Part shown: in pieces, positions 10,555 through 62,206 of the stretch
How the letters are laid out: each line of letters opens with the position of its first letter
Numbering within the stretch: the first letter of the stretch is position 1
NCBI GenBank assembly: GCA_965285935.1
Contig: OZ260667.1
Location: forward strand, 52,204,001-52,268,000
Direction: 5' to 3'
DNA from: Ophelia neglecta
Taxonomy: Eukaryota
DNA length: 64,000 nucleotides
Notes under the pieces: generated by a model
Database searches by the model: none
Told to the model about the DNA's origin: nothing
The model's input: only the letters and a program-made list of their open reading frames with translations
Made by a program: the position numbers and the translations under genes

Positions 10555-10633
10555 ATGGGATATTCGGCTGGAATAAAATTCTCCAGTGGCCTGGTACTCG
10601 CCGTGGCGATTTTGAGTTACGCGAGAGCTGAAG
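10555..10633 (+). CDS. Signal-peptide exon of gene B (MGYSAGIKFSSGLVLAVAILSYARAE), ending in a GC donor
   Basis: aaaATGG start context, a hydrophobic core and an A-x-A cleavage motif. Donor AAG|gcaagt is phase 1 and matches the phase-1 acceptor at 16198 (G|AC TGT ACG GCA ACG ATG GAT TTG). Confidence 0.65.
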
Positions 10634-59400: not shown

Positions 59401-62206
59401 TATGACTTCTGGCTCCCAAATAGAACCCATAGACCCTCTGTTCAGTGATGACGGTGACTCTATCAGTGCTATTGAACCAACCTTTTTTGGAGCTGGGGAT
59501 GTAGCACACTGGATAGAGTCCCTGGTATCGCTGGGCAAGGTGAATGGTACCGCAAGGGTGGTGGGTTCGAGTCCCATCCAAGTCAGAACAACATTTGAAG
59601 TGTCAAAACACTCCAAAAATTTAAATTGTCGCATGGATTTCCGCAGTAAGTTTAAAAAGACCTATATGACCCAGCCTATAATGAGAAAATATATCCTGCC
59701 TCGATATATATATATATATATCCAGTTTTGCTCAAATATTATTAATGGGCACTTTGTTTCGGAAATAAATTCATCAACTGGTCGCACAAACATATTTGAA
59801 TTTAATCATAAGTCGGGTATATCATTAAGTTTTCTATTTCCTTTAATATCTTTCTTTGAAAATCCTATAAACCAATGACCCCCCCCCCCTCGCCCCTTAT
59901 TTTTCAGATTGGAAGTTGATATCATCGACCATCACTCAGGCATACAGCACGTCAAATGGGAGATGTACCACACCTCAGATCCCATCCTTGTTCATTTAGT
60001 AGGAACGGCAGATGTAGGTGTATTTTTTAATGTAAATAGGTTTTGTATTTGTAAATCTCCTGCTTTATTGTGTAAAATAAACACCTTTCTATATTTAGTT
60101 TGTTTTTTTGCTTTACGATTATATCCTTATGCTTTCTAAAATATAATGATTCTTACAGGTTAAAACCTGCAAACTACCAGACAAGGGATGTTATTGTATA
60201 CCCAAGGGAGAGTGTTTTCTGAAAAGGTTTACTTTATCGCCGACTGCAAAGGAATTGGAAGTTTCAAATGGGCATACCGTCTCTCTAATAACTGCAACAA
60301 ATTTTGCATTGCTACAGGCTGTCTATATCTACCAGGTTATAATTTTAATGCTGTTAGTTATGAAGTGAAGACATACAATTAACTATGCAGTATGTACGCA
60401 CGGCATTAGTTTCATGGTTTGTTCATTGGAACCTATCAAAAAGCACATTAACATGTATTACTATAGTTGAAGTCCAAACCCAAATTTACGCTCGACGCAT
60501 CAGTTCAGACACAATAATAATTTCTGTATTTTATTATACACTAATAGGGCATCTTAGATACAAGTCCCCCCTCAACGGGTATTGTTCATATCAACTCTTC
60601 TGTGTCTGATGATTTGGGAAATACGACTGTGTTAGCTTCATGGGAACAGTTCTTTGATGAGCAAAGTGGTGTTATTTTTTACCAATATGGGTTCTCTGAC
60701 AAATGTTTGACATCCAGTGCTTTCGCGGTGCCAGCACCAATGGGAGTAGGTGAATTTTTAGCATATAGTAAAAACAAGTCTAGCGTAACATTTACAATGA
60801 TCATCAGTTCAAAATCTACAACCATAAAGTTAATTAAATAACAAGTATAATTATATTGAATTAGAACACTTTCGCTATTATTTTGAATACTAACATTTAG
60901 TATAATACTTTTTTGTTTAGATCTATCAAACTAATAACACATTTGTAAACTACACTCTCACCGGATCTCAACCATTTTATCTGACATTGGTTGCCTACAA
61001 TGGTGCACTTGAGCCGTCAATCCCGGTGTGTTCCAGCGTGATTCCTAAACACTCGCTAGGTTTGTATATCCTAGTACATATTTAAGAGCTCATTGTTTAA
61101 ACGGTTGAAATCGTTTCTTGATTTTATCAATGTAATTGATGGGCTGAATCGTTGGTTTGGAATCACAATGGTGAAATGTTCTTGTTAAAAGTGTTTAAAC
61201 AAGCTGAATTTGATGAAGCATGTATTAGTTAATTCTTAATGTAATATGCGCGAATGTACTATCCTAAGCACAGATTTGTTTATTTGCAACAGATAAACTG
61301 TCAACGGGGGCATTCGTTGGAATTGGCATTTCCGTTGCTATTTTGATCATATTCACCATTATTGGCTTAATAGCTCTGTGCTTAAGGTAATATCTTGTTT
61401 CATTTGCTTGAATATATCGAAAAAAATGCATTGTGTACGTGAACTGATTGGGGTAAACAATCAAGTGAGGCCTACATTTTTTAGATACTCTTACTAACTA
61501 TCGCAAGGTATTCTATGAAACCTATCCAACACCTGACATGGGAACAAGGAGGTGTTTGAATGGATAGGTCCAATCCCATAAACATTTAAGTATAATATGG
61601 CATAGTATTTGTGGATTGGACACAGGAACACATCTGGAGTATAACGTAACCAAGTTTCTATCAATCTATTGACACTACAATAAATGAGCTCGAACAATGA
61701 TGTCTAGGATAAATCAAATGGCCATTAAGATATTTTTACCACGTATAAATATAAAATTAAGGTACAATAAAAAGGGATCATATGATAACACTGCAATGAT
61801 AATTAAATATGCTAAAACTGCATAATAATGTACAATTTATAAATGCCCACTTGTTATTGTATTGTTTAAGAATGCTATTCACAGATGCCGGAGTGCTCCA
61901 GCCGAACCCCCGCCTGTGTCTACTGTCAACCCGGCTTACGAGAACAGTAGTGTCCAACCTGATTTGAATGAACTGGACGAGACCTTGTATGAAACTATAT
62001 CGCCTGAAGCAGACAATTCACACGTATACGACACTATGCATCAAGGAAATTTTGCTCCGACCGTTTCAAAAGTGTCCCCAATTTATGAAAACATGGAAAG
62101 TCCAGCTCGACCTGTGAGGCAACATCTGTTTGGTCACATGACCACCAAGCGTATAATTGTTAGACACGGGCATGGTAGAGGTCATGATAATTGTCTTCCT
62201 TATTGA
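44094..62206 (+). CDS. Paralogue C: single-pass type I membrane protein of about 1,020 aa (SP - TSP1 - EGF-like - Cys-rich - shared scaffold - TM - Tyr-motif tail); may be compromised by an internal duplication
   Basis: Exons 44094-44436, 48720-48866, 49188-49298, 51474-51613, 51726-51843, 52001-52127, 52377-52593, 52842-53031, 53197-53396, 53554-53814, 59129-59295, 59908-60031, 60159-60335, 60548-60745, 60921-61059, 61293-61386 and 61885-62206. All phases match and the lengths sum to 3075 nt, a multiple of 3. The model requires skipping the duplicated exons in 55660-57410. Confidence 0.65.
44641..44710. repeat. (GT)n/(GCGT)n microsatellite
   Basis: tgtgtgtgcgtgcgtgcgtgcatgcgtgcgtgtgtgt... 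Confidence 0.85.
44808..44939. repeat. Minisatellite, six copies of a 22-bp unit
   Basis: Unit tttgtctgccggctattcaccc, six near-perfect head-to-tail copies with no spacers. Confidence 0.95.
46820..48640 (-). mobile_element. 5'-truncated, frameshifted CR1/L2-like LINE (RT to 3' end), antisense in intron 1 of gene C
   Basis: KATGPD..., WKSASVIPLHKK...NYRPISLLPCMSKVFE, NQSGFIPSDST.NQL, AFEKVWHKGLL.KL, GVPQGSVLGPLL, LFADDT, YVRPILEYGS and WNKLP are spread over several frames. Confidence 0.95.
48720..48866 (+). CDS. Cys-rich exon 2 of gene C (absent from gene B)
   Basis: HCLRISNCGQLYCTSGSNQRCKRCHYDKGGQIKAYILKNSGRYPNRICQ has six Cys, a tttag acceptor and a C|gttagt donor. Phase 1-1. Confidence 0.75.
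49700..50720 (-). mobile_element. Highly degraded non-LTR retrotransposon RT fragment
   Basis: Minus strand reads FICLLDAEKCFDSI*H, then LFYLFINALLLEL...GFQIG...FADDV. Confidence 0.7.
52064..55216 (+). repeat. Copy 1 of a recent internal duplication in gene C (intact exons)
   Basis: Near-identical to 55660-59019, with initial offset 3596. Starts mid-exon at atgctggtgtacaccattgtg and ends at aatgttttcatttgct. Confidence 0.95.
54040..55000 (+). mobile_element. Internally deleted L2-like LINE remnant in an intron (duplicated at about 57640-58800)
   Basis: Endonuclease-like VVYRLPPSAKK and GDFNF; KLNLNPYKTD (compare LKLNxxKTE); 3' end TYGDRA...PKLWNTLP...LKTFLFKEAY. Confidence 0.7.
55660..59019 (+). 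pseudogene. Copy 2 of the internal duplication: half an exon plus four exons, one carrying a nonsense codon
   Basis: Lacks the acceptor of the first exon. TGG has become TGA at 56951-56953. Retains about 210 bp (58411-58620) that is missing from copy 1. Confidence 0.85.
57640..58800 (+). mobile_element. L2-like LINE remnant, second copy
   Basis: Same motifs as 54040-55000, plus YCNGLLCSLP and RVLNSVA (compare DYCNSLLxGLP and LQRVQNxAAR). Confidence 0.7.
59492..59585 (+). mobile_element. tRNA-derived SINE head or tRNA pseudogene
   Basis: ggggatgTAGCACACTGG (A box) ... gtgGGTTCGAGTCCcat (B box and T-arm). The acceptor stem does not pair, so this is not a functional tRNA. Confidence 0.6.
61293..61386 (+). 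CDS. Transmembrane exon of gene C
   Basis: caacag|AT AAA CTG... translates as DKLSTGAFVGIGISVAILIIFTIIGLIALCLR, about 25 uncharged hydrophobic residues followed by a basic residue. Phase 1 in, phase 2 out (AG|gtaata). Not present in the ORF track. Confidence 0.85.
61885..62206 (+). CDS. Cytoplasmic-tail exon of gene C with four tyrosine motifs
   Basis: Phase-2 acceptor ttcacag|A TGC CGG matches the TM exon. Reads RCRSAPAEPPPVSTVNPAYENSS...ETLYETISPEADNSHVYDTM...SPIYENMESP. An AATAAA lies at about 62515. Confidence 0.8.

What the first reader, a model, noticed from the sequence alone, without database searches (positions are those of the whole stretch)
10555..62206. Modular gene cluster: giant secreted proteins and a Tyr-motif receptor share one scaffold with swappable N-terminal heads
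Seen in sequence: B and C share homologous exons with identical intron positions and phases from the 'VCSWRPDS' EGF-like exon onward, but differ at both ends. B has an SP+VWA head and a long anchorless tail of FN3-like repeats plus a CBM-like domain. C has an SP+TSP1+EGF+Cys-rich head and a TM plus signalling tail. A is a second long anchorless form, and psiD is a dead copy. Established: VWA, TSP1 and CBM folds are ligand or glycan-binding modules, and tandem clusters with soluble and receptor forms, conversion and pseudogenes are typical of innate-immune or allorecognition families. Inference: this may be an undescribed invertebrate recognition system with a variable head, a constant stalk, and secreted and membrane-signalling versions. 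I do not recognise a named gene family.
Basis: partly seen in the sequence, partly recalled or inferred. Interest (0 to 1): 0.9.

Follow-up and report, generated by a model that had tools for sequence, protein, structure and literature searches.

The report
Mosaic secreted-protein and receptor gene array
This marine-invertebrate locus is a tandem array of giant secreted proteins plus one small tyrosine-motif receptor, all built on a shared, unnamed extracellular cassette that also occurs on pseudokinase receptors, adhesion GPCRs and giant matrix proteins from amphioxus to abalone; the family is real, old and apparently undescribed, but nothing here shows an immune role.

Summary
Gene B (window 10555-40371) and gene C (44094-62206) share 14 homologous exons with identical intron positions and phases. 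B has a signal peptide and a VWA head, then a tail of about 3,000 residues that ends without an anchor. C has a TSP1+EGF head, a transmembrane exon and a 107-residue tail with four Tyr motifs. 'A' is the 3' end of the upstream tandem copy. psiD is a broken fragment.

The array extends upstream of the window: G1 (TSP1 head, long tail), three VWA-headed copies, psiD, then C. Synonymous divergence (dS) changes up to 10-fold along the genes, so they are mosaics made by recombination or gene conversion.

The shared cassette is not local. It occurs in amphioxus, hemichordates, echinoderms, molluscs and a brachiopod. There it sits on giant secreted proteins, TM+Tyr-tail receptors, receptor pseudokinases and adhesion GPCRs. 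All are annotated 'uncharacterized'. Only the VWA head looks lineage-specific.

dN/dS of 0.1-0.4 and deep conservation argue against a diversifying immune or allorecognition system. No RNA data exist, so the splice models rest on intron phases and on orthologues.

The parts
1..7167 (+). 'A': 3' end (FN3-like units, CBM-like exon at 3269-3955, last coding segment 6970-7164 plus stop) of the upstream tandem copy B2, whose 5' end lies outside the window at C12:52181517
   Evidence: 93-95% nt identity to 33195-40391. Array map. Coding segments intact.
10555..10633 (+). B exon 1: ATG plus signal peptide; GC donor (AAG|GCAAGT); phase 1
   Evidence: Translation. Splice table. 100% conserved at the same relative place in B1 and B2. 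No RNA support.
16198..17112 (+). B VWA head: two exons (16198-16414, 16721-17112), flanked by phase-1 introns (a 1-1 symmetric module); DxSxS MIDAS motif present
   Evidence: Pfam VWA E 7.9e-11 and 1.2e-18. Phases. Found only in B1-B3; the nearest other VWA exons are 61% identical or less, on C2.
17518..23460 (+). B shared cassette: Cys-rich 17518-17661, EGF-like 17956-18066, s1 18645-18784, s2 18917-19034, s3 19208-19334, s4 19606-19822, s5 20072-20261, s6 20461-20660, s7 20856-21116, s8 21400-21608, s8b 21715-21835, s9 22325-22513, s10 22782-22988, s11 from 23186
   Evidence: Homology to C. Splice sites and phases. Collinear with amphioxus P0157.
23938..40371 (+). B long tail: at least 21 further coding segments of FN3-like units, the CBM-like exon (about 36565-37140) and the last coding segment 40174-40368 plus stop; no hydrophobic C-terminus
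   Evidence: Collinear with P0157 residues 986-3264. fn3 and DUF642 matches. Weak structural matches to CBM16, CBM4 and CBM22 from a low-confidence model.
42223..42953 (+). psiD: degraded fragment of exons s4-s6
   Evidence: Matches broken by stops and frameshifts. 68-75% nt identity.
44094..44436 (+). C exon 1: ATG, signal peptide, RRRRR run, TSP1 repeat, EGF-like; ends in phase 1
   Evidence: Pfam TSP_1 33.3 bits. Translation. 45-48% identical to the N-termini of Saccoglossus and amphioxus homologues.
46700..48600 (-). Frameshifted LINE reverse-transcriptase debris in C intron 1 (not part of the gene)
   Evidence: Translation of the minus strand.
48720..53814 (+). C cassette, first part: Cys-rich 48720-48866, EGF-like 49188-49298, s1 51474-51613, s2 51726-51843, s3 52001-52127, s4 52377-52593, s5 52842-53031, s6 53197-53396, s7 53554-53814
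55660..59019 (+). Internal duplicate block in C (3' part of s3 plus s4-s7 and intron), 99.2% identical to 52064-55216; nonsense codon at 56951-56953; cannot be spliced in frame after copy 1
   Evidence: Read contigs neither prove nor disprove it.
59129..61059 (+). C cassette, second part: s8 59129-59295, s8b 59908-60031, s9 60159-60335, s10 60548-60745, s11 60921-61059 (ends in phase 1)
61293..61386 (+). C transmembrane exon (phase 1 in, phase 2 out)
   Evidence: Sequence and frames.
61885..62206 (+). C last exon: cytoplasmic tail with NPAYEN, LYETI, VYDTM and PIYENM motifs, then the stop; unique in the genome
   Evidence: Similar acidic Y-E-x-I/V/L motifs in the tails of Haliotis, Saccoglossus, Ptychodera and Antedon homologues.

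Best explanation
The window holds the distal half of a tandem array (C12:52.10-52.27 Mb) of an old, unnamed bilaterian gene family.

The constant part is an extracellular cassette of about 600-750 residues. It consists of a Cys-rich exon, an EGF-like exon and about five FN3/Ig-like beta-sandwich domains, encoded by 12-14 exons.

B, with its copies B1 and B2, encodes a secreted protein of about 3,400 residues. Its order is signal peptide, VWA domain with a MIDAS motif, cassette, a long run of FN3-like units, a CBM-like jelly roll, more FN3-like units, and no anchor.

C encodes a single-pass receptor of about 1,030 residues. Its order is signal peptide, TSP1+EGF head, cassette, TM helix, and a tail of about 107 residues with four Tyr motifs.

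G1, upstream of the window, has the TSP1 head on the long tail. This is the architecture also seen in amphioxus.

Shown:
- Heads and ends are attached at conserved introns. The head/cassette junction is phase 1 in both genes, and the VWA, Cys-rich and EGF modules are each 1-1 symmetric.
- The genes are mosaics produced by unequal crossing-over or gene conversion.
- All copies are under purifying selection.

Inferred mechanism: the cassette plus head is a binding ectodomain.
- In the long forms it is tethered in the extracellular matrix, through the FN3 rod and the glycan-binding-like domain.
- In C it reports to the cell through tyrosine phosphorylation of the tail and docking of SH2 or PTB proteins.
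- In other animals the same cassette feeds receptor pseudokinases or adhesion-GPCR 7TM domains.

I therefore read the family as a matrix-adhesion and contact-signalling system, not as a diversified immune repertoire.
For: Exon homology and identical phases.

Domains.

Array map: G1, B1, B2, B3 (= B), psiD, C.

Mosaic dS:
- G1 vs B: 0.73 in Cys-s5 against 0.05-0.075 in the rest.
- B2 vs B: 0-0.009 in the 5' part against 0.06-0.08 in the rest.
- C vs G1: 0.3-0.5 up to s8, then saturated in s9-s11.

dN/dS is 0.1-0.4 throughout. All 35-38 tested coding segments are open in G1, B1 and B2.

B is collinear with amphioxus XP_019642180.1 (P0157) over residues 101-3264.

A profile of exon s7 finds 159 representative proteins. 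Those looked up come from Branchiostoma, Saccoglossus, Ptychodera, Glandiceps, Acanthaster, Patiria, Antedon, Haliotis, Lottia, Pomacea, scallops and Lingula.

The same Cys-EGF-s4...s8/s9 series precedes four kinds of C-terminal part:
- TM plus kinase fold: P0038, P0012, P0043, P0082, P0147, P0064.
- GAIN/GPS plus 7tm_2: P0140, P0097.
- TM plus Tyr tail: P0103, P0180, P0004.
- A tail of about 2,500 residues with DUF642.

The AlphaFold model of the Haliotis C-type orthologue has pLDDT above 90 over most of residues 80-850. It matches chains of FN3 domains (Z 9.7, rmsd 2.3 A, 96 residues for 336-446; Z 11.0 for 450-851).
Against: There is no transcript evidence. No RNA run holds the locus, so exon 1 of B (GC donor, 5.6 kb upstream), the VWA-to-cassette junction and the C tail junctions rest on phase consistency and on orthologues.

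None of the roughly 180 outside proteins held by that stage has a VWA head, so that head has no cross-species support.

Function is inferred from domain types only.
- The CBM-like assignment is weak: 22.4 bits against a cut-off of 27, and a model with pLDDT 54.
- The Tyr motifs are short and are not conserved position by position.

Whole-protein predictions for B and C themselves were therefore not made.
Confidence: 0.7

Rival explanations
1. One reading: an innate-immune or allorecognition system. Variable heads recognise non-self, the stalk is constant, and secreted and membrane versions act as opsonin and receptor.
For: Tandem cluster, pseudogene fragment and conversion tracts.

VWA, TSP1 and CBM-like modules occur in many pattern-recognition proteins (established knowledge).

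C-type receptors are multi-copy and partly clustered in Haliotis, with paralogues 61-74% identical.

The tails carry ITAM-like spacing of Tyr motifs.
Against: Only two head types occur in the array, and copies of each are nearly identical. The VWA exons are 95-100% identical among B1-B3. The TSP1 heads are 77-81% identical, with dN/dS 0.35 between C and G1.

dN/dS is 0.1-0.4 everywhere.

The long form is conserved end to end between phyla: mean column identity is 43% among amphioxus, hemichordate, starfish and abalone proteins. This is unlike fast-evolving recognition families.

There are no expression or challenge data.
Confidence: 0.12
2. Structural-matrix reading. The long forms are purely structural components of an extracellular matrix, cuticle, tube or mucus. 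The cassette is only a rod-like spacer. C and the other membrane forms reuse that spacer for unrelated purposes, so there is no functional link between secreted and membrane members.
For: The cassette folds as a chain of FN3/Ig-like sandwiches, the commonest spacer in extracellular proteins.

The long tail is made of FN3-like units with a CBM-like domain.

End-to-end conservation fits a structural role.
Against: The same ordered series of about 12 exons, including non-generic stretches with no Pfam model (for example the s6-s7 region), is kept on four unrelated C-terminal parts across phyla. This is more than reuse of generic FN3 spacers.

The secreted and receptor genes sit side by side and have exchanged sequence in the cassette: C vs B dS is 0.5 in s5-s8 against 1.6 in Cys-s4.
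Confidence: 0.2
3. Gene-model error. The VWA exons (with the upstream signal-peptide exon) form a separate small gene in front of a cassette gene, and there is no VWA-headed giant protein.
For: No homologue outside this genome has a VWA head. There is no RNA. B exon 1 uses a rare GC donor.
Against: The Cys-rich exon lies 405 bp after VWA exon 2 and has no start codon or signal peptide of its own.

The phases fit (1 into 1).

There is no TSP1-type exon upstream of B1-B3.

The VWA exons are kept intact in three copies, with dN/dS 0.29.
Confidence: 0.08

Closest known systems
Uncharacterized giant proteins of amphioxus, hemichordates, starfish and abalone (e.g. B. belcheri XP_019642180.1 = P0157, 3,273 aa; B. 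floridae XP_035661568.1 = P0042; Saccoglossus XP_077866322.1; Acanthaster XP_022088109.1; Haliotis asinina XP_067682774.1)
   Same: B is collinear with P0157 from residue 101 to 3264. The order is Cys-rich, EGF-like, cassette, FN3-like series, DUF642-like domain and the last exon. No TM segment was found in any of them.
   Different: B starts with a VWA domain. P0157, like G1 upstream of the window, starts with a TSP1+EGF head. The others show no recognisable head.
Uncharacterized single-pass receptors: Haliotis XP_071087257.1 (P0103, 984 aa) and Saccoglossus XP_077866797.1 (P0180, 988 aa)
   Same: Like C they have the cassette cut off right after s11, one TM helix and a tail of about 100 residues with several acidic Y-x-x-I/V/L motifs. 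P0180 also has the TSP1 head.
   Different: The tails cannot be aligned beyond the motif type. C alone has an NPxY motif and two YxxM motifs.
Receptor pseudokinases and adhesion GPCRs carrying the same cassette (scallop, abalone and hemichordate kinase-fold proteins P0082, P0147, P0064, P0038, P0012, P0043; starfish GAIN-7TM proteins P0140, P0097)
   Same: The same Cys-EGF-s4...s8/s9 ectodomain.
   Different: They have a kinase fold (Pfam E 1e-61 to 1e-74) or GAIN/GPS plus 7tm_2 after the cassette. The window's genes have neither. In 13 of the 15 kinase-type forms checked, HR(R/K) replaces HRD (HKR in one); GFG or SFS at the DFG position was found in 9 of them. They are probably catalytically dead.
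Draper / CED-1 / MEGF10 engulfment receptors (comparison from memory, not tested)
   Same: A single-pass receptor whose short tail combines an NPxY motif with paired Tyr motifs about 10 residues apart, which suggests PTB and SH2 docking.
   Different: Draper-type receptors are defined by an EMI domain and many EGF repeats. C has one TSP1, one or two EGF-like units and FN3-like domains. It is not a member.
Clustered, diversified invertebrate recognition families (FREPs, hypervariable Dscam, Hydractinia Alr, amphioxus VCBPs; established knowledge)
   Same: Tandem clusters with pseudogene debris and conversion; mixed secreted and membrane forms.
   Different: No hypervariable region, dN/dS of 0.1-0.4, and deep cross-phylum conservation of the whole protein.

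Membership tests
VWA domain (Pfam PF00092) | Profile match above the gathering score; MIDAS motif DxSxS...T...D | tested here: met
   42.9 and 68.4 bits against a cut-off of 23.8 for the two exons. D-T-S-G-S is read directly in exon 16198-16414.
Thrombospondin type 1 repeat (PF00090) | Profile match above the gathering score; W-x-x-W motif and Cys pattern | tested here: met
   33.3 bits against 21.6. A W-S-G-W-S-P-C motif is read in C exon 1.
Fibronectin type III fold (cassette and tail) | fn3 profile match or a structural match to FN3 domains | tested here: met
   A tail exon scores 25.9 bits against 25. In the model of orthologue P0103, residues 336-446 and 742-852 match FN3 domains at Z 9.4-9.7 and rmsd 2.3 A. 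This was tested on the orthologue, not on the window's own spliced protein.
DUF642 / CBM-like jelly roll (PF04862) | Profile match above the gathering score; beta-jelly-roll fold | tested here: inconclusive
   The window exon scores 22.4 bits against 27. Amphioxus P0157 scores 28.0 bits. The AF2 model is poor (pLDDT 54). Foldseek gives E of 3e-4 to 1e-3 to CBM16, EclA, CBM4 and CBM22 with low TM-scores.
Receptor tyrosine kinase | Cytoplasmic protein-kinase domain after the TM helix | tested here: not met
   C ends 107 residues after the TM helix and has no kinase exon. A search of the genome with a family kinase form found no kinase exon near this array or near the paralogue clusters at E <= 1e-6.
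Adhesion GPCR | GAIN/GPS domain plus 7tm_2 | tested here: not met
   C has a single TM exon followed by the last exon and the stop. GAIN and 7TM are present only in the starfish homologues.
Canonical ITAM receptor | YxxL/I, then 6-12 residues, then YxxL/I in the tail | tested here: not met
   C has YETI, nine residues, then YDTM: the second motif ends in M. Homologues P0004, P0103 and P0180 do show YxxI-x7-10-YxxI/V.
Draper/CED-1/MEGF10 | EMI domain and multiple EGF repeats in the ectodomain; NPxY plus ITAM-like tail | tested here: not met
   No EMI domain and no EGF array in the Pfam scans of C exons. The tail has NPAY. The resemblance is limited to the tail.
Diversifying immune or allorecognition gene family | Hypervariable region, or dN/dS near or above 1 between paralogues or alleles | tested here: not met
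   Pooled dN/dS is 0.10-0.42 for head, cassette and tail in G1, B1 and B2 vs B, and in C vs G1 and B. Population data could not be tested.

The most novel reading that the evidence does not exclude
The cassette defines an ancient bilaterian contact-signalling system, not seen so far in vertebrates. One and the same binding ectodomain is deployed in three ways: as a matrix-tethered giant form, as receptors that signal through phosphotyrosine docking (Tyr-tail forms and dead-kinase forms), and as adhesion GPCRs. Secreted and membrane members would then act on a common ligand or on each other. The array in this window would show how new members arise, by swapping heads and ends at phase-1 introns.
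Probability: 0.25. Interest if true: 0.8.

Novelty: new variant of a known kind. Interest (0 to 1): 0.6.

Why it matters
If the models hold, this is a textbook-clear, still-active case of exon shuffling. Within 170 kb the same cassette carries two different heads and two different ends, the breakpoints lie at symmetric phase-1 introns, and dS shows visible recombination tracts.

The wider point is that a conserved ectodomain of about 600-750 residues has no name, no Pfam model and no literature that I could find. It nevertheless links four classes of extracellular and signalling proteins in amphioxus, hemichordates, echinoderms, molluscs, a brachiopod and this animal. That gives a concrete handle on a set of orphan receptors, including a whole group of receptor pseudokinases. 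It also gives a testable idea: giant matrix forms and small signalling forms may share a ligand.

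Tried and rejected
RNA evidence: the look-up of sequencing runs found only three DNA-type runs of one sample and no RNA run. The splice models could therefore not be checked.

Loose ends at 55216 and 55662 do not match the window. The contig carrying a copy-2-type letter at 53340 lacks the stop-making change. 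It is therefore undecided whether the duplicate, or its stop codon, is real, allelic or an assembly artefact.

I did not try another route.

The search for homologous proteins reached only close relatives.

P0072, P0084 and P0057, which gave multi-stretch hits in the profile search, look like low-complexity chance matches and were dropped.

The AF2 model of the CBM-like exon was poor.

Foldseek and VIA on the 984-residue model gave only generic FN3 or Ig chains. The first beta domain (P0103 residues about 166-334) was barely tested and could not be folded alone without typing sequence.

Literature searches found no description. I searched by accession and locus names, by DUF642 plus FN3, by receptor kinase surveys and by the odd kinase motifs.

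Joined spliced proteins of B and C were deliberately not built for any search or fold. Exons were sent one by one by reference, and natural orthologues were used for whole-protein work.

Full report
WHAT IS IN THE WINDOW

The window is G000:C12:52204001-52268000 of a 762-Mb animal genome. It is AT-rich and intron-rich and has no N runs.

A self-comparison shows three things:
- A segmental duplication, 1-7187 = 33195-40391, at 93-95% identity.
- A 99.2% identical internal tandem duplicate, 52064-55216 = 55660-59019.
- Weaker matches (68-90%) linking 19628-21561, 42224-42953 and 52399-59290.

GENE MODELS

I compared all open frames as proteins. I then chose splice sites that keep the frame.

B (10555-40371) has these parts:
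- A first exon with ATG and signal peptide. Its donor is GC (AAG|GCAAGT).
- Two VWA exons (Pfam E 7.9e-11 and 1.2e-18, both above threshold). The DxSxS MIDAS motif is present.
- A Cys-rich exon and an EGF-like exon.
- Twelve further exons that I call s1-s8, s8b and s9-s11.
- A long tail.

C (44094-62206) has these parts:
- A first exon with signal peptide, a run of five Arg, one TSP1 repeat (33.3 bits against 21.6) and an EGF-like unit.
- The same Cys-rich, EGF-like and s1-s11 exons.
- A 94-nt transmembrane exon (61293-61386).
- A last exon (61885-62206) that encodes a cytoplasmic tail with NPAYEN, LYETI, VYDTM and PIYENM. The phases fit only with the acceptor at 61885.

For all 14 shared exons the boundary positions relative to the protein alignment and the intron phases are the same in B and C. 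Only s8 differs: it is 42 nt shorter in C, with the same phase.

The head/cassette junction is a phase-1 intron in both genes. The VWA pair, the Cys-rich exon and the EGF-like exon are each 1-1 symmetric modules, the classic condition for exon shuffling.

Exons were sent singly by reference, and natural orthologues served for whole-protein work.

THE LONG TAIL OF B

An amphioxus protein of 3,273 residues (P0157, XP_019642180.1) aligns collinearly with B. The alignment runs from its residue 101 (Cys-rich exon) to residue 3264 (last coding segment, 40198-40332). B is therefore one gene of about 3,400 codons.

The tail gives an fn3 match and a DUF642 match below threshold (22.4 bits against 27) in one long exon. 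The amphioxus orthologue passes that threshold (28.0 bits). My model of the exon was poor (pLDDT 54). It gave only weak matches to CBM16, EclA, CBM4 and CBM22 jelly rolls. 'CBM-like' is therefore probable, not shown.

B ends without a hydrophobic segment.

A, psiD AND A DEAD BLOCK IN C

'A' is the 3' end of the upstream tandem copy.

psiD (42223-42953) is a fragment of s4-s6 with stops and frameshifts.

C's internal duplicate starts inside exon s3 and holds s4-s7. Those four exons sum to 868 nt, so using both blocks would shift the frame. Copy 2 also has a TGG>TGA stop at 56953. Read contigs could not settle whether the duplicate or its stop is real.

Minus-strand ORFs at 46700-48600 are LINE reverse-transcriptase debris in C's first intron.

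THE WHOLE ARRAY

I fetched 110 kb upstream and 20 kb downstream of the window and mapped all exon types. The order is:
- G1: TSP1-type first exons at 52106618, 52112622 and 52115661; cassette from 52121958; CBM-like exon at 52141376; last exon at 52145028.
- B1: starts at 52148550.
- B2: starts at 52181517. Its tail is 'A'.
- B3: this is B.
- psiD.
- C.

The VWA exons exist only in B1-B3. Their nearest relatives (61% or less) are large VWA exon arrays on contig C2. The C tail exon is unique in the genome.

G1 is a mosaic. From TSP1 to s4 it is closer to C (63-94% aa) than to B (51-83%). From s6 onward it is 94-100% identical to B.

Synonymous divergence confirms the mosaic pattern:
- G1 vs B: dS is 0.73 in Cys-s5 but 0.05-0.075 in the rest.
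- B2 vs B: dS is 0-0.009 in the 5' part but 0.06-0.08 in the rest.
- C vs G1: dS is 0.3-0.5 up to s8 and saturated in s9-s11.

dN/dS is 0.10-0.42 in every partition. All 35-38 coding segments tested are open in G1, B1 and B2. The two apparent stops lie just past clear donors.

THE FAMILY OUTSIDE THIS GENOME

Ten paralogous copies of exon s7 from this genome gave a profile. It found 159 representative proteins, 52 of them at E <= 1e-10.

Every one of the 30 looked up is 'uncharacterized' or 'hypothetical'. They come from Branchiostoma, Saccoglossus, Ptychodera, Glandiceps, Acanthaster, Patiria, Antedon, Haliotis, Lottia, Pomacea, two scallops and Lingula.

Mapping the window's exons on these proteins shows the same ordered series, Cys-rich, EGF-like, s4...s8/s9. 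It is followed by one of four ends:
(i) About 2,500 more residues with a DUF642-like domain and no TM segment. This is the long form. P0157 also has the TSP1 head.
(ii) One TM helix and a tail of about 100 residues rich in acidic Y-x-x-I/V/L motifs. Examples are Haliotis P0103, Ptychodera P0004 and Saccoglossus P0180, which also has a TSP1 head.
(iii) One TM helix and a kinase fold (Pfam E 1e-61 to 1e-74).
(iv) GAIN/GPS plus 7tm_2.

The C architecture and the TSP1-headed long architecture are therefore ancient. Only the VWA head has no counterpart among the roughly 180 outside proteins held by then.

In 13 of the 15 kinase-type members checked, HR(R/K) stands in place of HRD (HKR in one); GFG or SFS at the DFG position was found in 9 of them. 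They look like receptor pseudokinases. I found no paper holding these motifs.

STRUCTURE OF THE CASSETTE

The Haliotis C-type orthologue P0103 was modelled with a 107-row alignment that included the window's exons as separate rows. The model has pLDDT above 90 over most of residues 80-850.

Foldseek and VIA-align match it to chains of FN3/Ig-like domains:
- Single FN3 domains at Z 9.4-9.7 and rmsd 2.3 A, for residues 336-446 and 742-852.
- PTPRD FN4-6 at Z 11.0, for residues 450-851.

The ESM Atlas structure search points to bacterial Ig-like repeat proteins.

The cassette is therefore a rod of about five beta sandwiches behind a small Cys-rich/EGF pair. The first sandwich (about residues 166-334, exons s1-s4) was barely tested.

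INTERPRETATION

Shown:
- The architecture.
- The shared exon structure.
- The array and its mosaics.
- Purifying selection.
- The cross-phylum family with four kinds of end.

Inferred:
- The head plus cassette is a binding ectodomain.
- The long forms sit in the matrix.
- C signals by tyrosine phosphorylation and SH2/PTB docking. The Y-E-x-I type motif fits the known preference of Src-family SH2 domains. This is from my own knowledge and was not tested.

The immune or allorecognition reading is not supported, for three reasons: there are only two head types, copies are nearly identical, and both low dN/dS and end-to-end conservation between phyla (mean column identity 43% among long forms) argue against it. 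It is not excluded either. C-type genes are multi-copy and partly clustered in abalone.

LIMITS

- No RNA run exists for this locus.
- The VWA junction has no orthologue support.
- Absence of the family from vertebrates, arthropods or cnidarians was not tested.
- Earlier notes of this scan guess that the animal is an annelid or a mollusc. I did not check this.

Noticed in passing
outside the window: G000:C12:52097054-52118100 (loci L016-L018): Upstream of G1's cassette lie three intact, about 80-90% similar first exons at 52106618, 52112622 and 52115661. Each has its own ATG, signal peptide, RRRR(R) run, TSP1 and EGF-like unit. There is also a more divergent intact one at about 52097054 and two broken ones. 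They could be alternative first exons or leftovers of duplications.
   Followed up: partly
window 44094-44436 and the G1 head exons: All TSP1-type heads carry a run of four or five Arg right after the predicted signal-peptide cleavage site. This may be a proprotein-convertase site.
   Followed up: no
database proteins P0038, P0012, P0043, P0064, P0082, P0091, P0112, P0125-P0127, P0067, P0040, P0177: Kinase-fold members of the family have HR(R/K)LAARN (HKR in one) instead of HRD, and where the DFG position was found, GFG or SFS. This holds in molluscs and hemichordates alike, so they form a conserved group of receptor pseudokinases. No paper in the library holds these motifs.
   Followed up: partly
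G000:C2:63.40-63.66 Mb (outside the window): Dozens of tandem VWA-domain exons lie here, the closest relatives (61% or less) of B's VWA head. They are a possible source of the head.
   Followed up: no
window 46700-48600, minus strand: Frameshifted non-LTR (LINE) reverse-transcriptase remnant inside the first intron of C.
   Followed up: partly
window 44654-44940: A GTGC-rich microsatellite, and a 22-nt minisatellite (6 copies, 95% matches) just downstream of C exon 1. Together they create long spurious open frames.
   Followed up: yes
window 10633: B exon 1 appears to use a GC-AG intron (AAG|GCAAGT), conserved in B1 and B2.
   Followed up: partly
window 55660-59019: The duplicate block in C carries a 210-bp insertion (58411-58619) relative to copy 1. 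Read contigs show a further haplotype-like variant of exon s6, so the locus is polymorphic in the sequenced sample.
   Followed up: partly
G000:C1:23.49-23.75 and 26.24 Mb; C7:55.89-56.48 and 64.26 Mb; C12:40.64 and 53.28 Mb: There are at least ten more paralogues of the cassette in this genome, several in tandem. The C1 copies encode about 280 residues of the cassette in one exon. The C12:40.64 Mb copy has TSP1-type exons 3-5 kb upstream.
   Followed up: partly
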